Positions 1 through 45,559 of a stretch of 64,000 nucleotides of DNA are shown piece by piece. How positions within the stretch are numbered: the first letter of the stretch is position 1; every line of letters begins with the position of its first letter. Both the position numbers and the translations under genes were made by a program. The notes under the pieces are model-generated. The model saw nothing but the letters and a program-made list of their open reading frames with translations. It searched no databases and had not been told where the DNA came from. The stretch is taken from the IMG/VR virus record IMGVR_UViG_3300044632_001003, positions 62,001 through 126,000 of that record. One strand, written 5' to 3'.

Positions 1-15
1 CTTCGAACTGAGAGT

Positions 16-74
16 ATTGTAGCAGGTCAGCGGCGGGCAGCGGCTAGCAGCAGGTCCAGTAGGACAACTGCCAC
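16..74 (-). promoter_or_regulatory. early promoter cassette (degenerate palindrome + -10 TACAAT)
   Basis: GGTCCAGT-N6-ACTGCCAC at 53-74, 31 bp from -10 at 16-21. Confidence 0.55.
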
Positions 75-242
75 AACCGCCTTCCAAAAGCCCAGGGCGG
101 TGATTCCAAACCACCCCAGCACCAGCACCAGGAGCCACGCTTTCAGGGCAACGACGCCAGCGACGCCAACGATCAGGATACCTGCCAGAGCCACCATCTG
201 CGGGGTGCTGAGGTCCTCAATCCAGGGGTAACGCTTGCTCAT
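27..242 (-). CDS. small hydrophobic/membrane early protein
   Basis: 71-aa ORF with two hydrophobic stretches; promoter cassette directly upstream (264-322). Confidence 0.7.
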   Translation of the reverse strand: MSKRYPWIEDLSTPQMVALAGILIVGVAGVVALKAWLLVLVLGWFGITALGFWKAVVAVVLLDLLLAAARR

Positions 243-263
243 GGGTGCCTTGCGGTTGAGAGT

Positions 264-322
264 ATTGTAAGGGGTCAGCGGTGCCCTTTGGGGCAGGGAG
301 TGGACAGTGCCTCAGGTGTCCT
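264..322 (-). promoter_or_regulatory. early promoter cassette
   Basis: TGGACAGT-N6-GGTGTCCT 301-322; -10 TACAAT 264-269; 31-bp gap. Confidence 0.7.
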
Positions 323-470
323 CATCCTCCCCCAGAATGAACCCATCAACCCATCCTGCTGTGTATCCGTCATCTTTGGTGAACAGGCGGATCTTAAGAA
401 GTTTGGCGATTGCAAAGGGCAAACCGATCACCAGGGCTCCAGGGATGAGAATGGCAAGCAGTTCGGTCAT
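312..470 (-). CDS. 52-aa membrane-anchored early protein (MTELLAILIPG...), below ORF-track cutoff
   Basis: hand translation; promoter 493-551 upstream; stop codon lies inside the 301-322 palindrome. Confidence 0.65.
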   Translation of the reverse strand: MTELLAILIPGALVIGLPFAIAKLLKIRLFTKDDGYTAGWVDGFILGEDEDT

Positions 471-492
471 GGGGTTCCTTTGAACTGAGAGT

Positions 493-551
493 ATTGTAGC
501 GGGTCAGCGGGCGATCAGGTCGCCTGCAGTGTACAGTGCCTGAGCTGTCAC
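493..551 (-). promoter_or_regulatory. early promoter cassette
   Basis: TGTACAGT-N6-GCTGTCAC 530-551; -10 TACAAT 493-498; 31-bp gap. Confidence 0.7.
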
Positions 552-671
552 ATGGCGGACGGGGCGAATCGGTTCCCATAGTATCCAGAGCAGCAGAGCG
601 GCAACGGTCAGGCGAAGCATGGTAGCACGGTGGAACTCAGGGGAACGGGAACGGGTCAGGGAGCGGATCAT
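504..671 (-). CDS. small hypothetical protein (probable start MIRSLT)
   Basis: 3' part of track ORF 504..758; ATG at 671 overlaps the TGA of the upstream ORF. Confidence 0.55.
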   Translation of the reverse strand: MIRSLTRSRSPEFHRATMLRLTVAALLLWILWEPIRPVRHVTAQALYTAGDLIAR

Positions 672-811
672 GCGATGTGAGCAGGGGAACCACAGGAACG
701 GTAGAATTCTACCATACGTTCCGCCTCTGCCAGGGTGGGGAACCATTGCGACCGCCACTCACAGTGGTTGTAGGGGACCTGGTAGCGGACTTCGTAGCGG
801 GTCAGTGCCAT
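668..811 (-). CDS. 47-aa hypothetical protein (MALTRYEVRYQVPYNHCEWRSQWF...)
   Basis: hand translation; resembles small early ORFs I recall from cyanomyophages. Confidence 0.65.
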   Translation of the reverse strand: MALTRYEVRYQVPYNHCEWRSQWFPTLAEAERMVEFYRSCGSPAHIA

Positions 812-905
812 GGGTCAGTTGAAAGACTTTGGGGTGGCGGGTCCGTGACCTCCCGCCTACGGGGTCAAGGGGTCTGTGGGGTTGCCCCCGCCGTTCCTCC
901 CCTTG
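812..905 (-). ncRNA. candidate structured 5' leader RNA (GNRA hairpin + H-type pseudoknot)
   Basis: AAGGGG/CCCCTT stem enclosing GGGG-GCAA-CCCC; crossing stems TGACC/GGTCA and GGCGGG/CCCGCC. Confidence 0.35.
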
Positions 906-913
906 TTGAACAT

Positions 914-972
914 AGTATGGCACGGCAGAGGGGGCAGGTCTATGGGGTGTGTGCCACATTCTGAACTGTCAC
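914..972 (-). promoter_or_regulatory. early promoter cassette
   Basis: GTGCCACA-N6-ACTGTCAC 951-972; -35 TAGACC, 17 bp, -10 CATACT. Confidence 0.75.
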
Positions 973-1553
973 AGCACCTCTTTGCCGAACTTGCCACACA
1001 GGTAGAATGCCATTCCTTTATCTTTCAGGGTGCAACCTGCAAAGGTGAGAGGAACATAGGCGCCGTTAGTTTTAGATGCTTTGGTGCGAATTTGCAGCAG
1101 TCCGTTAGGACCAGTGATGGTGCTCAGTTGCTCACCAGCATTGAACTTAGCACGAATGGTATCACAAATGTGGTTGTAATCCTCCGCCAGTTCCTGATAG
1201 TGTTCGGGGTGAGTTTCAGGGTTCAGAACCTCAGTGCCCACATAATCGTTGGAGCGGGTGAAACCAACGTAGATGGTTTGAGAGAGTTTCTCACCGACTT
1301 TGCTGTCAGCGAAACTAACACTATCCTCCAGAATCTCAGAGAGGCAATGCTTCAGTTGGGTGACAGCGATAGACTCACCAACCGTGAAGGTCTTCAGTTC
1401 TCCATCCACCAGATCTTTCAGGTTGGAACTGTTAGGAATGCCCAGGGCAGTTTCAATCAGTTGCCCACGGGATCCTTTGTTCTTCCCAGGTTTGGCGAAC
1501 GCAGCGAAGTTAGTTACCTTCAGTTGGGCAGCGACTTGCAGGGTGTTGAGCAT
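969..1553 (-). CDS. mutH: MutH/Sau3AI-family endonuclease
   Basis: motifs NKGSRGQLIE..LG, D..DGELK, LQIRTKAS and AFYL parallel MutH (DKG..G..LE, D..ELK, LQIRPKAA, GFYL); start moved to ATG 1553 downstream of promoter 1576-1633. Confidence 0.7.
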   Translation of the reverse strand: MLNTLQVAAQLKVTNFAAFAKPGKNKGSRGQLIETALGIPNSSNLKDLVDGELKTFTVGESIAVTQLKHCLSEILEDSVSFADSKVGEKLSQTIYVGFTRSNDYVGTEVLNPETHPEHYQELAEDYNHICDTIRAKFNAGEQLSTITGPNGLLQIRTKASKTNGAYVPLTFAGCTLKDKGMAFYLCGKFGKEVL

Positions 1554-1575
1554 CGGGTGCGTTGCTGATGAGATT

Positions 1576-1633
1576 AGTATAGGGCACCAGGGGCACCCCA
1601 CAAGGGGGTCTGTGCCACTTCAACGATTGGCAC
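1576..1633 (-). promoter_or_regulatory. early promoter cassette
   Basis: GTGCCACT-N6-ATTGGCAC 1612-1633; -35 TTGTGG; -10 TATACT. Confidence 0.75.
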
Positions 1634-2519
1634 ACTGGAAGCGACCGCTGTTGAAGTTAGCGTTAGAAAAGACCTCACGATTCACCAGTTTGAACATACC
1701 AAACTGATTCACCAGAACGTAACCCTCAGCGTCGATTCTGTTACCGTACAGATAAGCAGCAGGACCATCATTGCGGCAGAGGAACAGGCAGTCATCTTTG
1801 ATAGACTTCACCAATGCCCACAGACGCAGCAGGTTAGCATCACAATCAAAGTCCTCAGGATTCACCTCTTCACCAGCACGAATGCAGGCATTGATCTGTT
1901 GTTTGATCTTTGCCGCTTCCTTCTCACTCACAAAGGTGGCAGTTTGTGCCATCTGACGGGCGAACTTGCACACCTCTTCAACATCAGCGAACGACTCCTG
2001 ATTGTGCAGGATGTATGCATTCGGTTTCACGAACTTCACCGTTTCGGTATCAGTCCAGATGCTACGGTCAGGGAATGCCTGGGCGTCACGAAGATCGCTC
2101 TCAGCATAATAGCAAGTGTGCGGGGCGATGATAATTTTCTGGGAAACTACCTCACCGAACTTATACGTGATGGTGTTAGGATTGTATTCGGTATCACCAC
2201 CGAACCCAATGAAATCACCCTGATAGATGGTTTCGAAACGCGGCAGATAATCGAAGCAAGCGTGAAGAATGTCTGCTACGTTGCCTTCGTAGTGTTGATC
2301 AATGTCCTCATGATTGTGAGCAATACGAATCTTCTTTTTGTTGAACACTGCCTTGGTTCCTACAAAGAACTCACCGCAAGCAGGGTCAATCCCCCACACG
2401 ATGGCAGGGGCACCGTCGATCTTGACGCTCAGGGCACCAGGGGTCACGAACCAGTCCAGGACGCTCAGGTCGCCCGTGAGGATGGTATCTTCGGGGTGCT
2501 CTTGGTGCTTGTTCTGCAT
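1620..2519 (-). CDS. ligase-like nucleotidyltransferase (KxDG), DUF6267-like
   Basis: SVKIDGAP (motif I), YQGDF (III), AEGYVLV (IV), MFKLVN (V). Confidence 0.6.
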   Translation of the reverse strand: MQNKHQEHPEDTILTGDLSVLDWFVTPGALSVKIDGAPAIVWGIDPACGEFFVGTKAVFNKKKIRIAHNHEDIDQHYEGNVADILHACFDYLPRFETIYQGDFIGFGGDTEYNPNTITYKFGEVVSQKIIIAPHTCYYAESDLRDAQAFPDRSIWTDTETVKFVKPNAYILHNQESFADVEEVCKFARQMAQTATFVSEKEAAKIKQQINACIRAGEEVNPEDFDCDANLLRLWALVKSIKDDCLFLCRNDGPAAYLYGNRIDAEGYVLVNQFGMFKLVNREVFSNANFNSGRFQCANR

Positions 2520-2599: not shown

Positions 2600-2792
2600 C
2601 CAGGAGGTCTGGATCCAGCAGGTCGGGATAGTAAGACTCAACCTCTGAAATCAGTTCCTCATCAGTATAACTGGTGAGATTTTCTTCCATCTGGTCACCA
2701 ACAATCTGCAGCAAATCTTTGGTGCTCATGTTATCAAGCAAACGGTCGATGTATGCTTCAACCAGTGCTTCACGATCGAAAGTGTCAGTCAT
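2589..2792 (-). CDS. small acidic hypothetical protein
   Basis: 67-aa track ORF, D/E-rich. Confidence 0.75.
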   Translation of the reverse strand: MTDTFDREALVEAYIDRLLDNMSTKDLLQIVGDQMEENLTSYTDEELISEVESYYPDLLDPDLLGDS

Positions 2793-2796
2793 GGTT

Positions 2797-2994
2797 TCAG
2801 TTCAGAACGTGACGATAATCAATGGATTTGATGCACCAACCAGATGCACAAGTGATCTCTTCAACTAAATCATCTTCATCATCTGCCTCCCAGATTTGAC
2901 CAATGTATTCTGCATTTAGAAGGTCTTTGTCATAAGCAGTCATCTCATCATCGTCATCAGTATCAAACTCAATGTAGAGGATTTGGAACTGCAT
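2797..2994 (-). CDS. small acidic hypothetical protein
   Basis: 65-aa track ORF with DTDDDDE and EADDEDD runs. Confidence 0.75.
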   Translation of the reverse strand: MQFQILYIEFDTDDDDEMTAYDKDLLNAEYIGQIWEADDEDDLVEEITCASGWCIKSIDYRHVLN

Positions 2995-3119
2995 CAGTAA
3001 TCGTAGTTAGAGTTCAGATACTCATTGACATCGAACTTTTCATCTTTGAGTTCAGGAATGTCAAGGTCAAAGATCTCACCAGGAGCATCTTGAATCTCAG
3101 ACCAGAGTTCATCAAACAT
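2994..3119 (-). CDS. 41-aa acidic micro-protein (MFDELWSEIQDAPGEIFDLDIPELKDEKFDVNEYLNSNYDY)
   Basis: hand translation; directly behind promoter 3144-3202. Confidence 0.7.
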   Translation of the reverse strand: MFDELWSEIQDAPGEIFDLDIPELKDEKFDVNEYLNSNYDY

Positions 3120-3143
3120 GGCGTGTCTCTCAGGGACGAATGT

Positions 3144-3202
3144 AATGTATCAGGGTCTGGGGGGCATTGCAACCCCCCTTGTGACACTTACTCAACTGTC
3201 AC
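3144..3202 (-). promoter_or_regulatory. early promoter cassette
   Basis: GTGACACT-N6-ACTGTCAC 3181-3202; -35 TTGCAA, 17 bp, -10 TACATT. Confidence 0.8.
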
Positions 3203-3346
3203 ACTCACCTCTTTGATGTTAAGACCCATCAACTGGTTTGTGACACGATTGCAGACAACTTCGGTGGGGTTCTTTACTCTGGACTTCTCATACCAGAAGG
3301 TAACGCAACCATCGTAAGTTTCGACCCGAACTTTAACTTCAGTCAC
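3188..3346 (-). CDS. 52-aa hypothetical protein (GTG start, MTEVKVRVETYDG...)
   Basis: hand translation; behind promoter 3370-3427; stop codon inside the next palindrome. Confidence 0.6.
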   Translation of the reverse strand: MTEVKVRVETYDGCVTFWYEKSRVKNPTEVVCNRVTNQLMGLNIKEVSVTVE

Positions 3347-3369
3347 GGTTGAATCTCAGGAACGAATGT

Positions 3370-3427
3370 ATAATAACCCACGTGGTGGGGTTATGGTAAA
3401 ACTGTGTGCCACTTCACGAACTGGCAC
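3370..3427 (-). promoter_or_regulatory. early promoter cassette
   Basis: GTGCCACT-N6-ACTGGCAC 3406-3427; 30 bp to -10 TATTAT. Confidence 0.75.
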
Positions 3428-3429
3428 AA

Positions 3430-3815
3430 TTGCTCTTGATATCTGCCCTCTGGGTCTTTAAAGTACTTATACCCTACGGACATCGATACCAAAGGTATCT
3501 ATAAGAATTCATATTTCTAGATATCATTCTCAATAAGAAAGGTCTTATTGAGAATTATAATAAAGCACATTTAGATGGTGTGGGAAGGGGTGAGTGGGGT
3601 GAAGCACATATTCTTGCACATAAGGCGGGCTATGTGTGCCGCGTGGGTATCTAGAACTCACCAGCCGCGATTCTCAATAAGAAACTAGTTATTGAGAATG
3701 AGATCTAGATGTGTATGTGTGTATCTAGATGATGTATGATGTGTGCGTCTCGACGAGATATAATGAATGCGTGTGCGATCTAGTCGAGACCACACACGCA
3801 CGTCTCGACGAGATT
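3430..3815. repeat. non-coding repeat/hairpin block A
   Basis: inverted repeats ATTCTCAATAA..TTATTGAGAAT at 3526-3555 and 3670-3699; CTCGWCGAG-type motifs at 3749, 3780, 3804; several TCTAGA; no credible ORF. Confidence 0.75.
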
Positions 3816-4289
3816 CTACCAGTTCTTATTGAACACGAACCCATCTTCGAAATCAAAATCATAACGAAGATTACAGTTCCAGGTAGCATCCCAATCAACT
3901 ACCACGAACGAAGGTGCATCAAACCCATAGATGTCAGTGGTAAATTCTTCGGCAAATGCTGCCTCAGAATCATAAGGACCCTGATAGGCATCTTCGAAAG
4001 ACTGAAGATCCGCCTCATCATAGAGTTCCAGGAATGCATTCACAGCACCCTTACCATAAGAACTACACAGAGTCTGATACAGTTCCTGATACTCTTCGGA
4101 GATCTCATCCTCCAGAGTATCATTGTTCAGGATACCCTTGACAGTCAGCAACTCAGTGTAGAATTCAGTGTATTTGAGTTTGCCATCACGCTCATACCCA
4201 CAGGCACGAACGATTTCAGACATCTTAGCAGGCGGGTTTTGTGCCTGCATTTCATTCACTTTGTTCAGCAGGGAAGAACCAGTCAGCAT
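3816..4289 (-). CDS. fusion of cyanobacterial AbrB-like N-terminal domain and ArdA-like acidic C-terminal domain
   Basis: N-terminus MLTG..LLNKV..SEIVRACGY....YTEFYTELLTVKG; C-terminus YQGPYDSEAAFAEE...VDWDATW...DFEDGFVF. Confidence 0.6.
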   Translation of the reverse strand: MLTGSSLLNKVNEMQAQNPPAKMSEIVRACGYERDGKLKYTEFYTELLTVKGILNNDTLEDEISEEYQELYQTLCSSYGKGAVNAFLELYDEADLQSFEDAYQGPYDSEAAFAEEFTTDIYGFDAPSFVVVDWDATWNCNLRYDFDFEDGFVFNKNW

Positions 4290-4313
4290 GGTCGGTGTCT
4301 CAGGAACGAATGT

Positions 4314-4372
4314 AATGTAGATCGGATTGGTCAGGAACGCAAGGGGGTGTGTGCCACTTATCAGACTGGCAC
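4314..4372 (-). promoter_or_regulatory. early promoter cassette
   Basis: GTGCCACT-N6-ACTGGCAC 4351-4372; -35 TTGCGT, 17 bp, -10 TACATT. Confidence 0.8.
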
Positions 4373-4558
4373 AAGCCCCATCTCATCAATCATAATATCC
4401 CGCACACTTTCACGGTCGAAACTATCACCACAGAAATCAGCACCTGAATGAATGTATTTAAACGTTGCCTCAATGATATCATCATCAGTGGCACCCATAT
4501 CATAAATGCCACCAGGACCATAGAAGGACTTTACGTAACGAATGAATTCCACCATCAC
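4361..4558 (-). CDS. small acidic hypothetical protein
   Basis: 65-aa track ORF with GDSFDRESVRD motif; ends inside the palindrome. Confidence 0.75.
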   Translation of the reverse strand: MMVEFIRYVKSFYGPGGIYDMGATDDDIIEATFKYIHSGADFCGDSFDRESVRDIMIDEMGLVPV

Positions 4559-4782
4559 TTCACCTCCGCCAGCAGCAGTTTGTGAATGCGGTCTGCTTCC
4601 TCTAAGATATCACCATCCAGACGGTCCCACTCTACCCAATCATAGGCAGAAAGTGCAGTCTCATAAGAACCATCAGGCAGCAGGTTAGCATACATCAGAA
4701 CCCGCTGATTGTTTGCATCCAAAGTGTAAGTGCAATTGTTGAGTTTGGAGATGGCGAAAACCATTGGATTTCTCAGCGACAA
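4555..4782 (-). CDS. hypothetical protein
   Basis: 75-aa track ORF; ATGA overlap with the next gene. Confidence 0.7.
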   Translation of the reverse strand: MSLRNPMVFAISKLNNCTYTLDANNQRVLMYANLLPDGSYETALSAYDWVEWDRLDGDILEEADRIHKLLLAEVK

Positions 4783-4786
4783 ATGA

Positions 4787-4860
4787 ATATTACCCCACCA
4801 GAGGACCCAGTGGCCAGAGGACCCAGTGGGGAATCAGTGTGCCACTACCTCAACTGTCAC
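4787..4860 (-). promoter_or_regulatory. early promoter cassette with a 16-bp tandem duplication in the spacer
   Basis: GTGCCACT-N6-ACTGTCAC 4839-4860; CCAGAGGACCCAGTGG x2 at 4798-4829. Confidence 0.65.
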
Positions 4861-4996
4861 ATGCAACGAACTCTTGGAGATAGTAATCCAATGGCAGCTC
4901 AAGTTCAGCCGCTTTCTGTTCCCAAGCATCCCATTCTTCCTGGGAAGCATCATTCAGAAAATCTTCGAAAGTATAATCAAAAACTGGACCACACAT
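4850..4996 (-). CDS. 48-aa acidic protein ending KAAELELPLDYYLQEFV (paralog of 11367..11573)
   Basis: start moved to MCGPVF, downstream of promoter 5021-5079. Confidence 0.7.
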   Translation of the reverse strand: MCGPVFDYTFEDFLNDASQEEWDAWEQKAAELELPLDYYLQEFVACDS

Positions 4997-5020
4997 TGGA
5001 TTAATTGCGACGACGAAGGT

Positions 5021-5079
5021 AGAATATCCCACCTGGTGGCAGATATCAAGGGGTCTTGTGCCAGTTCTCAAACTGTCAC
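5021..5079 (-). promoter_or_regulatory. early promoter cassette
   Basis: GTGCCAGT-N6-ACTGTCAC 5058-5079; -35 TTGATA, 17 bp, -10 TATTCT. Confidence 0.8.
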
Positions 5080-5080
5080 A

Positions 5081-5191
5081 TTACTCGAACGGGTCGAATT
5101 CTTTTACCCTACAATGAACATCTTCGTTAGGTTCGAGTTGCAATAACTCCCGCCAATCGATGTTATCCAGGTCCAGATCATCATAACACAT
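5081..5191 (-). CDS. 36-aa acidic micro-protein (MCYDDLDLDNIDWRELLQLEPNEDVHCRVKEFDPFE)
   Basis: hand translation. Confidence 0.55.
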   Translation of the reverse strand: MCYDDLDLDNIDWRELLQLEPNEDVHCRVKEFDPFE

Positions 5192-5265
5192 GATATCTAG
5201 TGTAACCTGTACGATACGCTTCTGTGCTAACATGAGGTCTAGATGTGTATGTGTACTAGATTATA

Positions 5266-5418
5266 TCATGCATAATGACGATATGCAAGCGATTCGTAAT
5301 CTTGCCCATCTCGTGCATAATCCTCGTCGAGATCTAGTGCATCCTGTGCATAATACTCGTCGAGATCTTGTCCGTAATCGTTGCTGAATGTATAGTCGAG
5401 ATCGTAGTCGTCGTACAT
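5266..5418 (-). CDS. 50-aa Asp/Tyr-rich micro-protein (MYDDYDLDYTFSNDYGQDLDEYYAQDALDLDEDYARDGQDYESLAYRHYA)
   Basis: hand translation; first ORF downstream of the consensus promoter at 5570-5598. Confidence 0.65.
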   Translation of the reverse strand: MYDDYDLDYTFSNDYGQDLDEYYAQDALDLDEDYARDGQDYESLAYRHYA

Positions 5419-5569
5419 AGCTCGTCGAGATTTGTTGAACGCTTATGAATTGTAGCATAAAACTCGACGAGATTGCAAGCCTTATGATGCACCGTCTCGT
5501 CGAGATTCATGCTAGTATATATGCACTCTCGTCGAGAAATGTTAAGATATGCTTATATTTCTCGACTAG
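5323..5569. repeat. phased array of CTCGWCGAG interrupted palindromes (block B)
   Basis: copies start at 5323, 5356, (5392), 5421, 5463, 5496, 5528, 5561. Confidence 0.8.
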
Positions 5570-5598
5570 ATTCTACCATACCCTTATAAGAATGTCAA
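5570..5598 (-). promoter_or_regulatory. consensus sigma70 promoter
   Basis: TTGACA-17-TAGAAT. Confidence 0.8.
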
Positions 5599-5647
5599 GG
5601 TCTGTGAGCCTTATGTGTGGGTCTGGGGATTTTCGGCGGGGCGTGGC

Positions 5648-5676
5648 TTGACAAACTGCGCGTCTTATGCTATACC
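5648..5676 (+). promoter_or_regulatory. divergent sigma70 promoter
   Basis: TTGACA-17-TATACC with extended TG. Confidence 0.6.
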
Positions 5677-5893
5677 TGCTTAGGTCACAAGACTTAGACC
5701 TATTCTCATCAATTAACTCAATTGATTCTCAATTATTCATTTTTATTGAGAATGTTACAAATCACTGACATATATTTAATTTAATATTAACCTTCCATAC
5801 CTCACCATAATACACAACACCAAATTCATTATACCGTGTTATTAATTATACATACACTGTTATAAATCCACAGTACACACCGTGTTATAAACA

Positions 5894-6727
5894 ATGGCAA
5901 GAGGCATCATTTATCTCATCATCAACAAGCAAACTGGTGAAAAATACGTCGGAAACACCACACTTGCAATGAATAAAGAATGGGCACACCAGATAGACCG
6001 TGCTAAAAGAATGTCCCGAGAACCCTTACACAAGGCATTCAGAGAACATGGTGTCCATAACTTTATGATTAGAGAGTTAGATGAATGCGATGAATTAGAG
6101 TTTAATGAGAAAACAAACTATTGGATAGAGCAATACAAACCTGAATACAATCCTGCCATTAGCGCCATAGAGATTGCTAAGAAGGCAATAGAAGAGTATA
6201 AACCTGCCGAAGGCAGGCCTGCCGAAGGCATAAGTGCCGAAGGCATAAGCGCAAGCGCCGCAAGCGCAGCACTACAAGAACTTGCTAAACCAAAACCAAA
6301 AGAAAAAAGAAAAGTTAATACCTCACACTTAATGCAATGGAATGAGAATACCCGTGGAGATGGTAAGAAGACAGGTCTTAAAATAAGATGCAAGAACTTA
6401 GAAACTGGTGTATGCACTGATTATGAATCAGCCAGAGAAGCAGCAACACAAGTGACAGGCAATCCGAATAACCGTGCAAACATTCTATCTGCTGCCAGGC
6501 ATTACCGCATTGCCTATGGTCATCGTTGGCAGATCTTAGAAGAAAAGGAAAAGAAAAAGGCGGTGTTTGGTGTCGATAAAAAAACGGAGATAATTGGTCC
6601 CCGTTGTGAAAGTATTAATGCTGCTGTTCATTTTTTTGAAGGCACCGATAAAAACGGAATTCTCAAGAGTCTGAAGAATCCAGGGCGTTATAGTTGGAAA
6701 GGTTATTACTGGTTCTATGTACGTTAA
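5894..6727 (+). CDS. GIY-YIG-fold protein with C-terminal NUMOD1-like DNA-binding modules; catalytic Arg and Glu appear replaced
   Basis: GIIY..KYVG N-terminus, NKEW instead of KRW, EKT instead of ERE, YN; two (K/R)xxTG...ES..(E/A)A modules. Confidence 0.7.
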   Translation: MARGIIYLIINKQTGEKYVGNTTLAMNKEWAHQIDRAKRMSREPLHKAFREHGVHNFMIRELDECDELEFNEKTNYWIEQYKPEYNPAISAIEIAKKAIEEYKPAEGRPAEGISAEGISASAASAALQELAKPKPKEKRKVNTSHLMQWNENTRGDGKKTGLKIRCKNLETGVCTDYESAREAATQVTGNPNNRANILSAARHYRIAYGHRWQILEEKEKKKAVFGVDKKTEIIGPRCESINAAVHFFEGTDKNGILKSLKNPGRYSWKGYYWFYVR

Positions 6728-6916
6728 TCAGAGTCCTTTATCTCTTTTCTCTTGATTCGCCGTCTGCTGCAAATGCATAGTCGTATGAAGACGTTGTAGA
6801 TTCGCATAGCGATTGTGCTGACGTGTTATGATTCCACTTTCCTTGGCTTTTGCAGCATCAACCTTTGCCTGTGGTGTTGTGAGAATCTGTTCCATGAACT
6901 GAAAGAACGTCTTCAT
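6728..6916 (-). CDS. small late protein with an MKTF..F..E N-terminus resembling the T4 capsid-targeting sequence
   Basis: MKTFFQFMEQ; late promoter ATAAATA at 6937-6943. Confidence 0.55.
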   Translation of the reverse strand: MKTFFQFMEQILTTPQAKVDAAKAKESGIITRQHNRYANLQRLHTTMHLQQTANQEKRDKGL

Positions 6917-17483: not shown

Positions 17484-18293
17484 TTAGTATAATGCCTCTA
17501 GCAGCGGATTCTGGGGTTCCTGTGCCACTTCCTCAACTGGCATAGCATCCTCTATGCGTTGCTTAGCAATCTCATAATATTCTTGTTCAAATTCCATCCC
17601 AATAAACTTTCGATTTAATTTAACTGCAGCAACACCAGTAGAACCAGAACCCATACAGTTATCAAGAACAATCTCACCTTCATTAGAATACGTTTTGATT
17701 AACCATTCCATTAGTGGAACAGGTTTCTGTGTGGGATGCACCTGTTGTTGAGCACTAAAGTCTCTGGAGATATTAAGAACAGACTTGGGATATCTTACAC
17801 CTTCATTACTGAAGGATTTACGTGGTTTCATACCATAACCATGGTCATTCTTGCGACCAACGTATCCCTCTGGATTCTTACTTGTTCTTGAGTACGGTTC
17901 TCCTTTTTCCATCTGTGGGTTGTACGTACCACCTGTTTCCCTGTAAAAAATTAGAACGTTCTCGTGAGTCTTCATTGGTCTGTACTTGGCAAGTCCAGGC
18001 GATCCACATTTGTTCTTGTTCCATACTAATTCGTACCTGAACCATTCTAGTTTTGAGCAGATAAGTTGTGCTGAAAAGGGTTGAGAACCAAATAGACATA
18101 TCACACCTTTAGGTTTGATGATACGCCCATATTGCTGCCACATTTGGTTAAAATCTAAAACTTCATCCCACTTGATGGAAGTAGTCCCATAAGGTGGGTC
18201 GCAGCAGATGAAATCAATAGAATTGTCTGGAATCTCTTTCATGAGTTCCAGACAGTCACCTAGTTGTAAGTCAAAGGGCATCATAACCTTCAT
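17484..18293 (-). CDS. beta-class N6A/N4C DNA methyltransferase
   Basis: CDPPYG near N-terminus; HPTQKPV; VLDNCMGSGSTG near C-terminus. Confidence 0.92.
   Translation of the reverse strand: MKVMMPFDLQLGDCLELMKEIPDNSIDFICCDPPYGTTSIKWDEVLDFNQMWQQYGRIIKPKGVICLFGSQPFSAQLICSKLEWFRYELVWNKNKCGSPGLAKYRPMKTHENVLIFYRETGGTYNPQMEKGEPYSRTSKNPEGYVGRKNDHGYGMKPRKSFSNEGVRYPKSVLNISRDFSAQQQVHPTQKPVPLMEWLIKTYSNEGEIVLDNCMGSGSTGVAAVKLNRKFIGMEFEQEYYEIAKQRIEDAMPVEEVAQEPQNPLLEALY
17486..17543 (-). promoter_or_regulatory. early promoter cassette embedded in the MTase 3' end
   Basis: GTGCCACT-TCCTCA-ACTGGCAT 17522-17543; 30 bp to TATACT. Confidence 0.75.
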
Positions 18294-18873
18294 GGGCAGT
18301 AATTTTTTTGAGAACAGATTCTTTGTAACATCCTACCAGAAAATCATACGCTTCAGCATGAGTACGCTGAACAGGAGTAGTATTAACCCGCCATTCAATC
18401 TGGAAAGGAAGATTGTTACCGTTAGAAGTGAGTTTGTTGAGAGTTTTAAGAGAAGTAAGATGAACCTCGTTAGTAACTTTATTCAATGAGATGATATAAT
18501 AATCACGATTATTATCTTTGCTGCTATGATTCTTTAAAAGTTCTTGAAACTTCTTCCAACGCTGAACATTAACTTTATCTTCGGGCAAGTCAGTCAGAGC
18601 ATACAGAATCGCTGCTTTCGAAGTAAAATTATCTGCAGCACTACCATACTTGGAAGATTTGATGTTGAGAGGATAACCAAACACCTTGACATCCCACCAG
18701 TTACGCTCTACAGGTTTCTCTACATTCTCACTACCATACTTATCAACCAACAGGTCAATGATAGTATCTTCATCATCAATGCTATTCACACGACCATCGC
18801 CATGCTTTTCACTGACAGAGATGACAATGCTGTTGAGAAACTCAACAACTTCAACAAGAATAGACGGAAACAT
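18271..18873 (-). CDS. putative type II restriction endonuclease (PD-(D/E)xK-like)
   Basis: WWDVK...NIKSS, RDYYIISLNK...NNLPFQ; coupled to the MTase; start MFPSIL downstream of promoter 18895-18952. Confidence 0.55.
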   Translation of the reverse strand: MFPSILVEVVEFLNSIVISVSEKHGDGRVNSIDDEDTIIDLLVDKYGSENVEKPVERNWWDVKVFGYPLNIKSSKYGSAADNFTSKAAILYALTDLPEDKVNVQRWKKFQELLKNHSSKDNNRDYYIISLNKVTNEVHLTSLKTLNKLTSNGNNLPFQIEWRVNTTPVQRTHAEAYDFLVGCYKESVLKKITAHEGYDAL

Positions 18874-18894
18874 CAAATTGATTAAACTATTAGT

Positions 18895-18952
18895 ATTATA
18901 CGTCTTTTTCTGTCTCTTGGATATCTTCTTGTACCACTTCCTCAACTGGCAC
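18895..18952 (-). promoter_or_regulatory. early promoter cassette embedded in the 3' end of 18896..19387
   Basis: GTACCACT-TCCTCA-ACTGGCAC 18931-18952; 30 bp to TATAAT. Confidence 0.75.
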
Positions 18953-19387
18953 ATCAACCTTGGAACTTCTCAAGGTTTTTGGCTTAGTGTATTCGACTGG
19001 AACAAAAGGTTGTTCAGGATCTTTTGTTGCTCTAATAGATGGACTAGAAGTAAATTTCTTGGTCTTTTTTGGTTGTTTTAAAAGTTTGTGGCGGAACAAT
19101 GTTTGACCAGGATTAAGCTCCTTAGGTGGTTCTGGATCTGGTTCAAATTGTTTTAAATATGTCTTTTTACTGAAGAGAAGATTCTTTTCAATTGCTTCTT
19201 CAGGAGTTGCAGGTAAATCTTCTTCTACAATTGATGATTGTTTCTGAATTTCTTCATAAACATCAACATGTGGAACATCTTCTGTCTTTTCTTCAACAGG
19301 AGCACATACAACTTCTGGTTCTGGTTGAACTACACTCTCTGGTTGTTTTTGAGATTCAGAAGAAACAAGATCAGAAAATCTTCCCAT
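18896..19387 (-). CDS. low-complexity E/P/K-rich hypothetical protein
   Basis: 163-aa track ORF. Confidence 0.7.
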   Translation of the reverse strand: MGRFSDLVSSESQKQPESVVQPEPEVVCAPVEEKTEDVPHVDVYEEIQKQSSIVEEDLPATPEEAIEKNLLFSKKTYLKQFEPDPEPPKELNPGQTLFRHKLLKQPKKTKKFTSSPSIRATKDPEQPFVPVEYTKPKTLRSSKVDVPVEEVVQEDIQETEKDV

Positions 19388-19402
19388 CGTCCTACTTTTT
19401 GA

Positions 19403-20230
19403 CTATTTATTATTCCAAACAGCAATTAGTTCATTTGCTTTCTTCCTACTAGAACCCTTGGCAGAAATGGTCCTAGTCACCTGAATTGGATAGATTTTAG
19501 CATTATTATAAAGTTCTCTTGCAACAGGAACATCGTGATTAGAAATAATGACGGTAATTCCTTTGTTTGCAAGTTGTTCTGCCAAATCTCTCAACTCAAC
19601 TTGCTGTGCATCAGTAAATCCATCCGTGGCATAATCTGTAAAGGATGCAGTTTCCGAAGCTGGAATGTATGGTGGGTCAAAATATACAGTATCACCTGCT
19701 TCTAAGTCCTCATAAAGTGACGGATCTTCAAAAGATAATGAAGTGAATCGTGTAAGTTTTTTAGTGAGGAAGAACATTCTAAAGTTCATCATCTCTTCCG
19801 ATGGGCAAGATGGTTTATCATACTTACCAAAGGGAACATTAAATTCACCTTTCTTATTATATCTCGACAGTCCATTGAAGCAGTGACGGTTCAGGTAAAT
19901 GAACAGTCGTGCCCTCTCTATAGTGTTTGTTGCCTGGTTAAAGTGCTTCCGCAACTCTAGATATGCTTCCTTAGTATTATTTTCTGGAATGAATAACTCT
20001 TCGCAATATTTGATGAAGTTATCATCCCCAGGATGAACCAAATTCTGGTAGATTGCCACCAAATCTTTATTCACATCATTCAAAATGTATTGCTCTGCTG
20101 GTGTGTTAAGGGCAACAGCAAGACTACCACCAAAGGGTTCGCAATAACGCTTTGGATATCCAATATGGGGAATAAGATGGGGCAGGACCCGTGTTTTGTT
20201 TCCTGCCCACTTCAAGAAAGTTTTGTTCAT
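19403..20230 (-). CDS. dam: Dam-family DNA adenine methyltransferase
   Basis: FLKWAGNK, YCEPFGGS, FNGLSRYNKKGEFNVPFG, VYFDPPY, ISNHD. Confidence 0.95.
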   Translation of the reverse strand: MNKTFLKWAGNKTRVLPHLIPHIGYPKRYCEPFGGSLAVALNTPAEQYILNDVNKDLVAIYQNLVHPGDDNFIKYCEELFIPENNTKEAYLELRKHFNQATNTIERARLFIYLNRHCFNGLSRYNKKGEFNVPFGKYDKPSCPSEEMMNFRMFFLTKKLTRFTSLSFEDPSLYEDLEAGDTVYFDPPYIPASETASFTDYATDGFTDAQQVELRDLAEQLANKGITVIISNHDVPVARELYNNAKIYPIQVTRTISAKGSSRKKANELIAVWNNK

Positions 20231-21150
20231 TTAATAGGGTCTTTCAATCCGTATTTTTCAAGAATGTCTTCAGAGATACACTGACTGTTTGCAGTTGTAG
20301 AAAGAGCATTATAACTCTTAATGATTCTTCTGGCAATCAAAACATCAGTATTTGGTCCAGAGATTCCTTCATACCAAACTTTTGGTTTGGACTTAGACAT
20401 TTCAAAGCAAACAAAATTCAGAACTTTTTCTCTCCTTCCGTTGATGACTTCACTTGCATTATCAAGAAATCTAATCAAGCAAGATAGTCCATACACGATA
20501 TCACCACGAACTTCACGTTTGCCTGAAACTTTATCAAAGTAGTCTTTTGCATAAGAAACTGCTCTCATAACGGTTACAAGTTCGTAATTCTTTACTGCTT
20601 GTCTCCACTGATATTCACCATTTAATTGATGTCCTTCAACATCACCAAGACTATCAACATAAACGCCACAGGCACTGAGATTGTCATTATATACAATTGC
20701 CTCTGGCAGACCAAACACATACCCTGCTCTCATTTTGTCAATGTGAGTGGGATTTTTACGTTTTGCATTTTGAGCGTGAAAGATTTCTGCTTCAATCTTT
20801 TCGCAGTCTTCATCACTTCTATTTTTGGTGTGTTCAAGCACCATACAAGGAACTTTATCAATACAACCACTCCACAGTGCCATAACTGCTTTGTGCTGCC
20901 CGTCAATCACGACGATTCTACCATCAGGACGAACGGCAACAATTAGTGGAACAAAATACCACTTGTTGAATTGACCATATGTATTAATATCACCACAAGA
21001 AAGGTCTCTTTGATAGCTTTCGGGAACTATTAACTTATAGACTTCTAGCTCTTTATACACTAGAAACTCGTTAATACTACCAGGACGAAACTTTTTTGCT
21101 TTCGATTTGAATTTATGTGCAAGCTGCACTAAAGGAACATAGTTCTTCAT
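20227..21150 (-). CDS. ParB/Srx-like (DGQH) domain protein, DUF6551-like
   Basis: YQR...PLIVAVRPDG..VVIDGQHK...EAEIF...N; coupled to dam. Confidence 0.65.
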   Translation of the reverse strand: MKNYVPLVQLAHKFKSKAKKFRPGSINEFLVYKELEVYKLIVPESYQRDLSCGDINTYGQFNKWYFVPLIVAVRPDGRIVVIDGQHKAVMALWSGCIDKVPCMVLEHTKNRSDEDCEKIEAEIFHAQNAKRKNPTHIDKMRAGYVFGLPEAIVYNDNLSACGVYVDSLGDVEGHQLNGEYQWRQAVKNYELVTVMRAVSYAKDYFDKVSGKREVRGDIVYGLSCLIRFLDNASEVINGRREKVLNFVCFEMSKSKPKVWYEGISGPNTDVLIARRIIKSYNALSTTANSQCISEDILEKYGLKDPIK

Positions 21151-30120: not shown

Positions 30121-31175
30121 TGGTCTTGGAGCATCTCCCAGTATTATAACCCGTCATATATGCGGAATGCAACCACTTGGTCATCAAATCCTTACGAGTA
30201 TTCACATCTTCTACTTCGCAATCACCGAAAAAATATTCACTACGAAGTGAAAAACCACCATAAAGGTCGTGAAACCATTTCTGAAATGCGACTTCGGCAG
30301 TATCTTCCCATTCCCATTCTGATGTAGGATGTTCAGTCATTTCAGTTCCTCTTCATCTTGCTCAATCTGAAAGATAGCATTTAGAAACTCCAGACCATAC
30401 TTACCCACGACCCAGGCATCTTTATCCTCAAAGAACCGATCACCAATAGTCCACATATCATAATACTCTTTACCTTTATTGAAGAAGGCAATCACATAAC
30501 AATACTCTTTGCCTTCACATTTATGCCACCTAACGAGTTCATACTTGTTGTTGACTTCGCACCAACGGAACTCTATGTTACGAAACCTCATTCTTCTTCC
30601 TCTTCATAAGGGAACATTTCATCATACTCTTCATCAGTCAGAGTAAGATACTGAACATCAGCATTTTTGTGTTCTTCGGCATACACCAACTGATAGTGAG
30701 CAAAACTGCTTTCAGAAGTGCTGGCGTATTCTAAAAGACCATCAACAAAGCATAGGTAGTTCATTAGAGCACCTCCCAATCACATTCCCAGAAGTCGTTG
30801 ATATTCACCCAGAAGAAGTATTTCTGGTTCTCTGATGCGAGAAACAGCATACCATCACCCTTATCCTGCTCCACAATACAGATAGGGTTGTTGTCCATCA
30901 TATTCGCAAGGCGGTTCTTAGCCTTCTTGCTTTTGGGTCTGACTGTTACTCTTCTCATTTTGAATCTCCAGTTTCAGTTTGCGAATACCAGTAATAAAGT
31001 AAGCAAAGTCACGGGATTCAGTCACCCGTTTTTCTTCACCACATACACCACACTTACCATTCCAGACAGATGAACAACCGACTGAATAGACACCATACTT
31101 TTGCCCACAATCCATACAGGTTGTGCCTGTCTGCTCAAGGCGTTTGAGTAGTGCCTTCTTCTCTTTGAGGGTCAT
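30113..31175 (-). other. run of small coupled hypothetical ORFs (30113..30340, 30337..30591, 30588..30779, 30764..30958, 30918..31175)
   Basis: track ORFs with overlapping start/stop codons. Confidence 0.7.
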
Positions 31176-45555: not shown

Positions 45556-45559
45556 ACGA

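What the first reader, a model, noticed from the sequence alone, without database searches (positions are those of the whole stretch)
3430..6727. Candidate control locus: helically phased CTCGWCGAG array, divergent promoters and an adjacent nuclease-dead GIY-YIG DNA-binding protein
Seen: the interrupted palindrome CTCG-W-CGAG (usually flanked by T/AT) starts at 5323, 5356, (5392), 5421, 5463, 5496, 5528 and 5561. Most spacings are 32-33 bp, one is 42 bp (about 3 and 4 helical turns). It also occurs at 3749, 3780 and 3804. The two blocks share TCTAGATGTGTATGTGT (near 3705 and 5238) and TCTCGAC(G/T)AGATTCTACC (near 3803 and 5560). The array sits right at the transcription strand switch, under back-to-back TTGACA promoters (5570-5598 minus, 5648-5676 plus). 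The only plus-strand accessory gene follows it and looks like a domesticated homing-endonuclease DNA binder. Inference: an iteron-like protein-binding platform (replication origin, packaging/pac site, partition-like site or master switch for early genes) with its cognate binder next door. I know of no description of such a module in cyanomyophages.
Basis: partly seen in the sequence, partly recalled or inferred. Interest (0 to 1): 0.8.

Follow-up and report, generated by a model that had tools for sequence, protein, structure and literature searches.

The report
Phased binding-site array, cyanophage early promoters
A 13-bp near-palindrome repeated about every three DNA turns lies over two strong early promoters and runs into the first small gene; it marks a conserved control region, for which I found no description, shared by hundreds of T4-like cyanophage contigs, but the protein that reads it is unknown, as is whether it shuts off early genes or helps start replication.

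Summary
CTCGWCGAG occurs 8 times exactly (10 with one-base variants) in 64 kb. All copies lie in two blocks, 3749-3812 and 5323-5569; chance predicts 0.05.

There they encode (D)LDE with nearly fixed rare codons. The other five copies sit on two tandem sigma-70-type minus-strand promoters: one in the spacer, one in the 5' UTR next to the ATG, the rest upstream and in helical phase.

The module (array, acidic ORF, 50-aa neighbour, divergent conserved promoter, AT-rich trough) recurs in S-SRM01, S-T4 and over 120 IMG/VR contigs. Fourteen of 86 loci carry tandem cyanobacterial DnaA boxes in the AT-rich part.

The GIY-YIG gene is a homing-endonuclease relative. It lacks the I-TevI R27 and E75 equivalents yet is under purifying selection. 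It is not the array's partner: arrays occur without it, and it occurs without arrays.

Best reading: operator/iteron-type sites for an unidentified protein that controls an early operon of small acidic proteins, one with a weak antirestriction match. A T4 oriE/oriF-like origin is the main rival. No paper describing the module was found.

The parts
5421..5429 (.). Site O1. It ends 2 nt upstream of the ATG of the acidic ORF, at about +10..+22 of promoter P1 (in the 5' UTR).
   Evidence: The same offset (+3..+7 from the ATG) is seen in nearly all oriented loci.
5463..5471 (.). Site O2. It lies inside the -35/-10 spacer of promoter P1, and its centre base is the opposite of the other sites.
   Evidence: A site in a TTGnnn...TAnnnT spacer is found in 56 of 77 unique loci. 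Logo.
5496..5504 (.). Site O3, centred about -59 from the inferred P1 start.
5528..5536 (.). Site O4, centred about -91 from the inferred P1 start.
5561..5569 (.). Site O5, the CTCGACTAG variant. It abuts the -10 hexamer of promoter P2.
5323..5400 (.). Three in-ORF copies (5323, 5356 and the degenerate 5392). They encode DLDE, DLDE and DLDY in the acidic ORF.
   Evidence: The LDE codons are almost fixed as CTC GAC GAG.
5266..5418 (-). Conserved 50-aa acidic ORF (MYDDYDLDY...LAYRHYA), the first gene of the leftward early operon. It is not annotated in the S-SRM01 or S-T4 records.
   Evidence: 100 loci; 35 of 35.
5449..5478 (-). Promoter P1: TTGCAA-18-TACAAT with a TG extension.
5570..5598 (-). 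Promoter P2: TTGACA-17-TAGAAT with a TG extension, 11 of 12 matches.
5600..5676 (+). G-rich stretch followed by the conserved plus-strand promoter (TTGACA 5648-5653, 17-nt conserved spacer, TATACC 5671-5676).
   Evidence: 68 loci; the spacer and the first transcribed bases are also conserved.
5700..5893 (+). AT-rich leader (GC 20 % at 5720-5800) with the inverted repeat ATTCTCAAT/ATTGAGAAT at 5725-5753. This is the slot that holds tandem DnaA boxes in 14 related loci.
5894..6727 (+). Gene for a 277-aa GIY-YIG homing-endonuclease relative. It has E29 and T74 at the I-TevI R27 and E75 positions and two C-terminal DNA-binding-type repeats.
5081..5233 (-). Second operon gene, a 50-aa acidic protein (phrog_12516). 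It is always found next to the acidic ORF.
3816..5071 (-). Rest of the operon: small acidic ORFs 4850-5071, 4555-4782 and 4361-4558, and a 157-aa protein (3816-4289) with weak antirestriction/ArdA matches.
3749..3821 (.). Block 1: sites at 3749, 3780 (variant) and 3804. On the minus strand an extended -10 (TGGTAGAAT, 3813-3821) overlaps the stop codon of the 157-aa gene.
   Evidence: The same kind of block follows this gene in other loci.
3516..3731 (.). Block 1 companions: two ATTCTCAAT...ATTGAGAAT inverted repeats (3526-3555, 3670-3699), a G-rich stretch, and the TCTAGA-flanked element that is also found at 5232-5258.
   Evidence: D9, D15, I2.
3394..5080 (-). Four stem-loop-plus-promoter cassettes (3394-3428, 4339-4373, 4827-4861, 5046-5080), one ahead of each small minus-strand ORF. 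They resemble PeSL cassettes.
   Evidence: D1, D7. PeSL is described in PMC4122927.

Best explanation
The CTCGWCGAG copies are DNA binding sites of the operator/iteron type for a sequence-specific protein that has not been identified. The fuller form of the site on the sense strand is AATCTCG-W-C(G/T)AGA. The sites lie on one face of the helix from about +16 to -124 of two tandem, strong, host-type (sigma-70) promoters. These promoters drive a leftward early operon of small acidic proteins; one of those proteins has weak antirestriction matches. One site fills the -35/-10 spacer of P1, one lies in the 5' UTR against the start codon, one abuts the -10 of P2, and further copies continue into the first ORF.

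Occupancy of these positions would exclude or block RNA polymerase. The most likely role is therefore cooperative shut-off, or dosing, of these very early promoters. Smaller site blocks do the same upstream of other small early genes.

What is shown: the sites, their phasing, their positions relative to promoter-like hexamers, their conservation, and nucleotide-level constraint inside the ORF. What is inferred: that a protein binds them, that binding represses, and that the operon is early.
For: Clustering far beyond chance: 10 of 10 sites in the window fall in two blocks. In S-SRM01, all 13 sites found in the 50 kb examined (60-110 kb) lie in three blocks within 5.5 kb.

Conservation across genera, and in a sample chosen without using the motif: of 35 unique loci found through the neighbouring 50-aa protein, 35 have the acidic ORF and 34 have at least 4 non-coding sites at the same offsets.

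Positions relative to promoters: P1 has a site in its spacer in 56 of 77 loci, and its -10 ends 28-33 nt before the ATG, which places O1 in the 5' UTR.

Helical phasing: spacings cluster at 22-24, 31-33 and 40-43 bp. The resultant length is 0.49 at a period of 10-10.6 bp, with mean phase near 0.

Selection on the nucleotides inside the ORF: 58 of 62 LDE triplets (unbiased set) and 122 of 151 (motif-selected set) are CTC GAC GAG. The window's codon usage predicts about 0.7 %, and other conserved residues of the same ORF use the common codons with 15-25 % synonymous variation.

A hairpin is not required: single-arm variants (194) far outnumber double variants (36), and the flanks of paired sites show no covariation.

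The same sites recur upstream of other conserved small genes, and the last site is usually 2-8 nt from the ATG.
Against: No binder was identified. A wHTH ORF next to an S-SRM01 block occurs in only 6 of the sequences examined and not in the window. An AbrB-like 57-aa protein found in 34 loci is acidic and absent from the window.

The site is not a clean palindrome. The 5' AAT flank follows the sense strand of the downstream gene whatever the centre base is. That polarity would also fit an RNA-level, promoter-element or iteron role.

Sites next to start codons have no obvious reason under a pure DNA-operator model.

The promoters are consensus matches only.

The phasing statistics rest on related sequences, so the number of independent events is small.
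Confidence: 0.45

Rival explanations
1. Replication origin of the T4 oriE/oriF kind. The phased direct repeats are iterons for an initiator. The conserved divergent promoter fires into the AT-rich stretch and forms a priming R-loop. In some lineages host DnaA is recruited through tandem DnaA boxes. Binding at the iterons would also autoregulate the adjacent promoters, so this reading overlaps with the best explanation.
For: The plus-strand promoter is conserved in 68 loci, including its spacer. A GC trough of 25-29 % follows it, against a 41 % locus mean, at +280..+460 from the ATG; the window has 20 % GC at 5720-5800.

The sequence TTTTCCACA is the DnaA box used for cyanobacterial oriC (PMC4674748). 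Of 47 TTWTCCACA occurrences in 830 kb, 31 fall in this 200-bp slot. They occur in 14 of 86 loci, as 2-3 tandem copies in one orientation, and are followed by a conserved AT-rich segment that the window shares.

T4 oriF and oriG consist of a promoter plus an AT-rich unwinding element. T4 oriE has evenly spaced direct repeats and an early promoter (PMC3016281).

T4 oriE also has 45-50-aa ORFs downstream of it, a GIY-YIG gene (segC) 0.8 kb away and gene 6 1.7 kb away. Here, gp6 homologues lie within the fetched flanks of arrays in 25 loci and in S-SRM01.

The sites are mostly direct repeats with polarity.
Against: There are two or three site blocks per genome, and most lack their own promoter-plus-AT-rich unit.

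The array is about 150 bp from the AT-rich stretch, with promoters in between, and its sites overlap the leftward promoters rather than the unwinding region.

DnaA boxes are present in only 16 % of loci and not in the window. No initiator gene was found, and there are no RepEA/RepEB homologues.

The T4 'iterons' are the coding repeats of the gp5 beta-helix and their role is unproven. GC skew in the window follows gene orientation and is uninformative.
Confidence: 0.25
2. An RNA-level element. In the long leader transcribed from P2 the self-complementary copies pair with one another (O4 with O1, O3 with O2). This hides the start-codon region or creates a double-strand RNase site. Transcripts from P1 carry only O1 and stay open. 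Alternatively, the copy next to each ATG is read by a translational repressor or an endoribonuclease.
For: The last site lies 2-8 nt before the ATG of at least three different gene families. Site polarity follows the sense strand. The 148-nt P2 leader folds into nested O4:O1 and O3:O2 stems at -44 kcal/mol, z = -4.3.
Against: The fold follows trivially from the palindromic cores. Flank complementarity within a locus is no better than between loci (4.47 against 4.81). Single-arm variants are common. Spacing quantised at about 10.5 bp has no RNA rationale. O2 and the more upstream sites lie upstream of the P1 start. No Rfam family matches.
Confidence: 0.1
3. Repeated regulatory cassettes spread by duplication and recombination in a hyperplastic region, like PeSL cassettes, with no dedicated binder. 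The motif would be a passenger of cassette copying, and the phasing a by-product of the unit length.
For: The two blocks share flanks. The blocks sit between variable small ORFs next to stem-loop-plus-promoter cassettes. PeSL cassettes are known to mediate shuffling in T4-like phages (PMC2839356, PMC4122927). One contig carries tandem 24-bp units.
Against: The 9-13-bp core is almost invariant while the sequence between copies diverges completely across genera. The rare codons are held inside the ORF at synonymous saturation. The offsets to P1 and to the ATG are fixed.
Confidence: 0.08
4. The adjacent nuclease-dead GIY-YIG protein is the cognate binder of the array.
For: In 29 of 61 loci a GIY-YIG-type gene sits in the same place and orientation. 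The protein has DNA-binding-type repeats. I-TevI is known, from my own knowledge, to repress its own promoter.
Against: Arrays occur without the gene in about half of the loci and in S-SRM01. The gene and the conserved promoter occur with no site and no acidic ORF in ACG-2014f. Catalytically intact-looking versions occupy the same slot, as expected for a free-standing homing endonuclease gene.
Confidence: 0.04
5. A partition (parS-like) or packaging (pac) site, read by the ParB-like protein at 20230-21150.
For: There is a weak PHROG ParB-like match (E = 3.7e-6, residues 39-113). Phased arrays of inverted repeats occur in plasmid centromeres (my own knowledge).
Against: No Pfam match. The gene lies among two DNA methyltransferases and an endonuclease. 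From my own knowledge, T4-like phages package by headful without a pac site and do not need partition. The sites overlap promoters.
Confidence: 0.03

Closest known systems
T4 oriE (iteron cluster plus early promoter, repEA/repEB)
   Same: Both have evenly spaced short direct repeats that partly lie in coding sequence, an early-type promoter, 45-50-aa ORFs just downstream, a GIY-YIG homing endonuclease gene within about 1 kb, and baseplate wedge genes nearby.
   Different: The T4 repeats have a 24-nt period and are the coding repeats of the gp5 beta-helix. They are not palindromic and their function is unproven. Here the repeats are mostly non-coding, near-palindromic, spaced 21/32/42 bp, and overlap promoters. 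There is no sequence homology to RepEA or RepEB.
T4 oriF/oriG (promoter plus downstream AT-rich unwinding element, R-loop priming)
   Same: A conserved promoter fires into an AT-rich trough 40-200 bp downstream.
   Different: The T4 promoters are MotA-dependent middle promoters; here the promoter is of the sigma-70 early type. R-loop formation was not tested. DnaA boxes, seen here in some loci, are not part of the T4 origins.
Iteron/operator arrays that autoregulate an adjacent promoter (lambda ori inside gene O, P1 incC, KorB operators of RK2, Aca-controlled anti-CRISPR promoters); comparison from my own knowledge
   Same: Short, repeated, often palindromic sites in helical phase overlap -35/-10 and +1 of strong promoters. 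In lambda they lie inside a coding sequence. In Aca systems they control early anti-defence operons.
   Different: No cognate protein has been identified here. The site has a sense-strand polarity. Copies sit against start codons. The system is in a strictly lytic T4-like phage.
PeSL cassettes of T4-like phages (promoter-early stem-loops)
   Same: Repeated promoter-plus-stem-loop units lie before small ORFs in a variable region and share flanks between copies.
   Different: PeSL descriptions contain no phased 13-bp site array and were not made for cyanophages. Here the GTGCCA...TGGCAC stem-loop family is the PeSL-like part, and the CTCGWCGAG sites are an added layer.
I-TevI and free-standing GIY-YIG homing endonucleases (seg genes)
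   Same: The N-terminal domain matches the I-TevI catalytic domain by sequence (E = 3.5e-9) and by fold (TM 0.72). The linker-plus-DNA-binding-module layout is the same. The gene is present or absent at a fixed intergenic slot.
   Different: The residues equivalent to R27 and E75 are E and T/L in a 12-member clade that evolves at dN/dS of about 0.13-0.17. The clade is therefore probably not a nuclease but is kept for another role.

Membership tests
Iteron-type replication origin | Several direct repeats of one short sequence at helically phased spacing | tested here: met
   There are 5 or more non-coding copies, mostly in one orientation, with spacing modes at 22-24, 31-33 and 40-43 bp.
Iteron-type replication origin | An adjacent AT-rich unwinding region, often with host DnaA boxes | tested here: inconclusive
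   An AT-rich trough is present in all loci. DnaA boxes are present in 14 of 86 loci and not in the window. The trough is about 150 bp from the nearest site.
Iteron-type replication origin | A cognate initiator protein that binds the repeats, and replication that starts there | not testable with these tools
   No initiator gene was recognised.
Transcriptional operator array | Sites overlap the core promoter elements or the start of the controlled promoters | tested here: met
   O2 lies in the P1 spacer in 56 of 77 loci, O1 lies in the 5' UTR, and O5 abuts the P2 -10. The promoters themselves are consensus predictions.
Transcriptional operator array | Dyad symmetry matching a dimeric regulator | tested here: inconclusive
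   The core CTCG-W-CGAG is symmetric, but the flanks and the variant frequencies are asymmetric and follow the sense strand.
Transcriptional operator array | An identified regulator whose binding changes transcription | not testable with these tools
   The candidates (wHTH, AbrB-like, 62-aa basic protein) do not co-occur consistently with the array.
PeSL cassette | An early sigma-70-like promoter joined to a stem-loop, repeated in hyperplastic regions | tested here: met
   Met for the GTGCCA...TGGCAC family at 3394, 4339, 4827 and 5046. The CTCGWCGAG sites themselves are not part of that definition.
GIY-YIG homing endonuclease (for the 5894-6727 product) | GIY-YIG alpha/beta fold with the GIY and YIG motifs | tested here: met
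   The family profile matches the I-TevI domain at E = 3.5e-9. Foldseek gives TM 0.72-0.73 to 1mk0/1ln0. The IIY and YVG motifs are present.
GIY-YIG homing endonuclease (for the 5894-6727 product) | Catalytic Arg (I-TevI R27) and Glu (I-TevI E75) | tested here: not met
   The window protein has E29 and T74. All 12 clade members have E and T/L at these positions. Other proteins in the same slot keep R and E.
ParB/parS partition module | A ParB protein with an HTH that binds clustered palindromes, usually with a ParA partner | tested here: not met
   There is only a weak PHROG match to the ParB N-terminal part, no Pfam match, no ParA was recognised among the neighbouring genes, and the gene lies in a DNA-modification cluster 15 kb away.
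Structured RNA family | A conserved secondary structure supported by covariation | tested here: not met
   No Rfam match. There is no within-locus excess of flank pairing. Single-arm variants are common.

The most novel reading that the evidence does not exclude
The locus is the principal early replication origin of a large clade of cyanomyophages. It would be a compound origin in which phased iterons (partly overprinted on a 50-aa gene), a conserved early promoter that primes an R-loop in an AT-rich element, and in some lineages host DnaA boxes work together. The same iterons would time the shut-off of a first-wave anti-defence operon. The domesticated, nuclease-dead GIY-YIG protein would serve as an accessory origin- or promoter-binding factor in the lineages that keep it.
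Probability: 0.2. Interest if true: 0.8.

Novelty: new variant of a known kind. Interest (0 to 1): 0.6.

Why it matters
Cyanomyophages lack the T4 MotA/AsiA switch (my own knowledge). How they time early genes and where they start replication are both poorly known. This locus gives a concrete and widespread cis element to test: at least 480 IMG/VR stretches carry the linked 50-aa gene. Two cultured phages, S-SRM01 and S-T4, carry the module.

The element consists of a defined 13-bp site, two predicted early promoters, a divergent conserved promoter and an AT-rich/DnaA-box segment. It also shows regulatory sites being maintained inside a tiny protein-coding gene through fixed rare codons. In addition, it offers a clade of homing-endonuclease relatives that lost their catalytic residues yet stay under strong purifying selection. 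Finally, the first operon encodes small acidic proteins that are candidates for anti-defence functions.

Tried and rejected
- Near-identity search of phage records: no match. A distant search found only S-SRM01, S-T4 and one single-cell virus contig.
- tblastn with the 50-aa acidic protein against phage records found only S-SRM01; the query is short and low in complexity.
- Rfam at gathering and at permissive thresholds: nothing in the region.
- Literature searches for the motif string, cyanophage early-promoter motifs, PeSL in cyanophages, and cyanophage DnaA boxes: no description of this module. The one paper pairing the string with 'cyanophage' was a chance match inside a terminator list.
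- Host-factor idea: a two-site pattern scan of 185,579 species genomes returned only single pairs in genomes with GC of at least 50 %, and no cyanobacterium among the 120 kept.
- Binder hunt by co-occurrence: clustering 7,003 ORFs around the arrays gave mostly small acidic proteins. The basic or DNA-binding-looking candidates (62-aa type A protein, wHTH, AbrB-like, 62-aa ORF at 6728-6916) were inconsistent or uninformative.
- The hairpin/cruciform model was rejected on variant counts and on the lack of flank covariation.
- The idea that every site is a -35 or -10 element was rejected. Only 16 % of sites have a TAnnAT hexamer abutting them, and the -35-like spacing is inconsistent.
- GC skew in the window follows gene orientation and says nothing about an origin.
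- The full genomes of S-SRM01 and S-T4 were not fetched. Genome-wide site counts therefore rest on the 64-kb window, 50 kb of S-SRM01 and the fetched loci.

Full report
**Identity of the window.** The window is part of a T4-like cyanophage (Kyanoviridae). The DUF6267 protein at 1620-2519 is 67 % identical to that of Synechococcus phage S-SRM01 and 45-58 % identical to many other cyanomyophages. There is no near-identical record. Almost all genes from about 6.7 kb onward are on the minus strand.

**The observation.** CTCGWCGAG occurs 8 times exactly, against 0.05 expected. The one-base variants CTAGTCGAG (3780) and CTCGACTAG (5561) bring the total to 10, all within 3749-3812 and 5323-5569. A further degenerate copy lies at 5392. 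The minus-strand promoter at 5598-5570 scores 11 of 12 with a TG extension. The plus-strand TTGACA at 5648 has a weak -10 in this phage but is conserved in relatives.

- A distant DNA search matched window 5132-5525 to S-SRM01 (76 %) and to S-T4 (70 %).
- Reading those loci showed a conserved ORF of about 46-50 aa, at 5266-5418 (minus strand) in the window. It runs MYDDYDLDY...DLDE...DLDEDYARDGQDY.SLAYRHYA, differs between phages by in-frame indels, and is unannotated in both records.
- Copies 5323, 5356 and 5392 are its DLDE/DLDY codons.
- The other five copies lie upstream of its ATG in the sense of the minus strand.

**Breadth.**
- The acidic ORF and the next gene, a 50-aa acidic protein (5081-5233), are each present in 92 of 123 sequences by tblastn, and in 100 and 95 loci by ORF clustering.
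- To remove ascertainment by the motif, I searched with the neighbouring protein instead. 480 IMG/VR stretches encode a relative of it. Among the 35 unique loci with at least 750 nt upstream, 35 have the acidic ORF and 34 have 4-7 non-coding sites.
- These are the closest 80 relatives of the window, so the full 480 were not examined.

**Anatomy, oriented on the acidic ORF**.
- Reading upstream from the ATG, site O1 ends 2-6 nt before the ATG.
- Next comes a promoter of the form TTGCA(A/T)-17/18-TA(C/T)AAT with a TG extension, which holds site O2 in its spacer. This arrangement is found in 56 of 77 loci, and the -10 ends 28-33 nt before the ATG.
- Sites O3, O4 and often more follow at steps of about 32 bp.
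- In 15 of 77 loci there is a second strong promoter whose -10 hexamer abuts a site; in the window this is P2 with O5.
- Further upstream lie a conserved GACCCACACA-type box and a G-rich stretch.
- Then comes a divergent promoter that is conserved even in its spacer and first transcribed bases (68 loci).
- Beyond it are lineage-specific short tandem repeats and an AT-rich trough (GC 25-29 % against 41 %).
- Relative to the inferred P1 start, the window's site centres fall at about +16, -26, -59, -91 and -124.

**Phasing.** Adjacent non-coding sites are spaced 22-24, 31-33 or 40-43 bp. The Rayleigh resultant is 0.49 at a period of 10-10.6 bp, with mean phase near 0. Because the loci are related, this reflects a few spacing classes rather than 236 independent events. 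Even so, the classes fall on two, three and four helical turns.

**The in-ORF copies are constrained as nucleic acid.** LDE is encoded by CTC GAC GAG in 122 of 151 cases (motif-selected set) and in 58 of 62 cases (unbiased set). The window's codon usage (CTC 10.5 %, GAC 23 %, GAG 29 %) predicts about 0.7 %. Other conserved residues of the same ORF use the common codons (GAT, TAT, CTT) with 15-25 % synonymous variation.

**Nature of the site.** On the sense strand of the downstream gene the consensus is (A)AATCTCG-W-C(G/T)AGA.
- The 5' AAT is over 88 % conserved. The mirror-image 3' T is only 35-49 % conserved.
- This asymmetry follows gene orientation, not the centre base.
- Variants in one arm are common: CTCGACTAG 154 and CTAGACGAG 40, against 36 double variants and 329 canonical sites. 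Base pairing between the arms is therefore not required.
- The long leader from P2 would fold into nested O4:O1 and O3:O2 stems (z = -4.3). This follows from the palindromic cores alone, and flank pairing within loci is no better than between loci.
- Rfam finds nothing.

**Other blocks.**
- S-SRM01 has three blocks within 5.5 kb and none elsewhere in the 50 kb examined.
- Across loci, secondary blocks of 2-5 sites lie upstream of a conserved 62-aa basic protein, upstream of a 47-aa protein, and just after the stop codon of the 157-aa protein with weak antirestriction matches. The last of these is the window's block 1.
- The window's homologues of the first two genes (30764-30958 and 668-811) have no sites.
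- Block 1 also carries two ATTCTCAAT...ATTGAGAAT inverted repeats, a G-rich stretch and a TCTAGA-flanked element, all of which recur near block 2. The operon at 5418-3816 is therefore bracketed by related control sequences.

**The GIY-YIG gene.**
- Pfam finds nothing. PHROGs assigns it to homing-endonuclease families.
- A profile of 11 homologues matches the I-TevI catalytic domain at E = 3.5e-9. An AlphaFold model (pLDDT 70) superposes on that domain at TM 0.72.
- The two C-terminal repeats of the model resemble a Paulinella DNA-binding protein and the I-HmuI DNA-binding region.
- The window protein has E29 and T74 where I-TevI has R27 and E75. The two matching PDB entries are the R27A and E75A mutants.
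- Twelve clade members share E and T/L at these positions. They have diverged to synonymous saturation (dS about 1.07) with dN/dS of 0.13 (N-domain) and 0.17 (C-domain).
- Other occupants of the same slot keep R and E.
- In 29 of 61 loci a GIY-YIG-type gene sits 300-670 nt from the acidic ORF's ATG, always downstream of the conserved plus promoter.
- S-SRM01 and about half of the loci lack it. Conversely, phage ACG-2014f has a dead-looking relative behind a similar promoter with no site and no acidic ORF.
- The gene is therefore linked to the promoter/AT-rich unit, as a homing-endonuclease insertion that was domesticated in one clade. It is not linked to the array.

**Origin-like features.**
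- TTWTCCACA occurs 47 times in 830 kb of loci, and 31 of these fall at +300..+500 from the ATG. They are found in 14 of 86 loci, as 2-3 tandem copies in one orientation.
- A conserved AT-rich segment follows them, and the window shares it. The window has the ATTCTCAAT inverted repeat in that slot instead of DnaA boxes.
- TTTTCCACA is the box used for cyanobacterial oriC (PMC4674748).
- The T4 review PMC3016281 describes oriF/oriG as a promoter plus an AT-rich unwinding element with R-loop priming. [quoted passage not shown]
- In the T4 record, oriE lies inside gene 5, with repEA (50 aa) and repEB (45 aa) on the opposite strand, segC (GIY-YIG) 0.8 kb away and gene 6 1.7 kb away. The repeats are the 24-nt coding repeats of the gp5 beta-helix.
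- T4 gp6 homologues lie within the fetched flanks of arrays in 25 loci and in S-SRM01. No gp5, RepEA or RepEB homologues do.

**Weighing the readings.**
- That the copies are functional sites is well supported by clustering, an invariant core amid divergent spacers, fixed offsets and fixed rare codons.
- A DNA-level role is favoured by the roughly 10.5-bp quantisation and by the lack of any pairing requirement.
- Their overlap with the spacer, start region and 5' UTR of the leftward promoters, and their recurrence before other early genes, make promoter control the most economical role (0.45).
- The neighbouring promoter, AT-rich unit and DnaA boxes keep an oriE/oriF-like origin alive (0.25). 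The two roles can coexist, as they do in iteron replicons.
- RNA-level action (0.10), passive cassette copying (0.08), the GIY-YIG protein as binder (0.04) and a partition or pac site (0.03) are less likely.
- The binder is unknown. A scan of cellular genomes gave no cyanobacterial arrays, and none of the phage candidates co-occurs consistently.

**Limits.** All promoters are consensus predictions. 'Early' is inferred from promoter type and gene content. The antirestriction label rests on a PHROG match (E = 2.6e-13) and a sub-threshold Pfam ArdA match.

Noticed in passing
window 3394-3428, 4339-4373, 4827-4861, 5046-5080: A GTGCCA-N10-TGGCAC stem-loop followed by a sigma-70-like promoter recurs ahead of each small minus-strand ORF. 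The same family is present in S-SRM01, S-T4 and ACG-2014f. It looks like the PeSL cassettes described for T4-like coliphages and vibriophages. The PeSL papers I read did not describe them for cyanophages.
   Followed up: partly
L123 30334-30636 (S-SRM01 record 90334-90636): An unannotated 100-aa ORF with a winged-helix look (weak MarR match, E = 0.015) lies in a 0.9-kb 'empty' stretch just upstream of S-SRM01's third site block. Homologues exist in five IMG/VR loci and none in the window. It is a possible array binder for some lineages.
   Followed up: partly
L001 about 3630-3771 (minus strand) and L002 about 2615-2757 (minus strand): The conserved acidic 45-48-aa ORF is not annotated in the S-SRM01 or S-T4 GenBank records. 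S-T4 also has about 1 kb (record 2606-3619) without any annotated gene.
   Followed up: yes
window 1-2000: GC is 54 % here against about 38 % for the rest of the window, with long overlapping ORFs on both strands (942-1568 plus, 969-1601 minus). The 210-aa minus-strand ORF has no Pfam match. This may be a recently acquired segment.
   Followed up: no
window 17484-21150: A DNA-modification cluster: an N6/N4 methylase (17484-18293), an endonuclease-like protein (18271-18954), a D12-class (Dam-type) adenine methylase (19403-20230) and a protein with a weak ParB-N-like match (20227-21150).
   Followed up: partly
L300 (RGAJ01000223.1, 3.9-kb contig of a Rhodobacteraceae MAG): This contig carries seven sites, mostly at 24-bp spacing, in cyanophage-like sequence (GC 50 %). 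It is probably a phage contig mis-binned into a bacterial MAG.
   Followed up: no
L326 3000-3700 (ACG-2014f_Syn7803C8): The GIY-YIG relative here appears to start upstream of the annotated CDS, which is labelled 'HNH endonuclease' and begins at 3675; it possibly starts at a GTG. It also lacks the R27 and E75 equivalents. Two short annotated ORFs on the opposite strand overlap its N-terminal part.
   Followed up: partly
window 5600-5700 and related loci: An 8-bp inverted repeat (GTCTTGTG ... CACAAGAC) brackets the conserved plus promoter. The downstream copy starts lineage-specific tandem units of 20-40 nt (for example CACAAG..CAGAGG..TTTATAAGG) whose role is unknown.
   Followed up: no
window 45311-45647: Three tRNA genes (Leu-TAA, Met-CAT, Ile-TAT) on the minus strand. 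Rfam lists only two of them.
   Followed up: no
L123 24722-25303 and 31021-31458 (S-SRM01): Homing-endonuclease-like genes flank two of the three S-SRM01 site blocks. One is an AP2-type protein next to the AT-rich unit. The other is an HNH endonuclease on the opposite strand next to block 3. The control regions therefore seem to be preferred landing sites for such genes.
   Followed up: no
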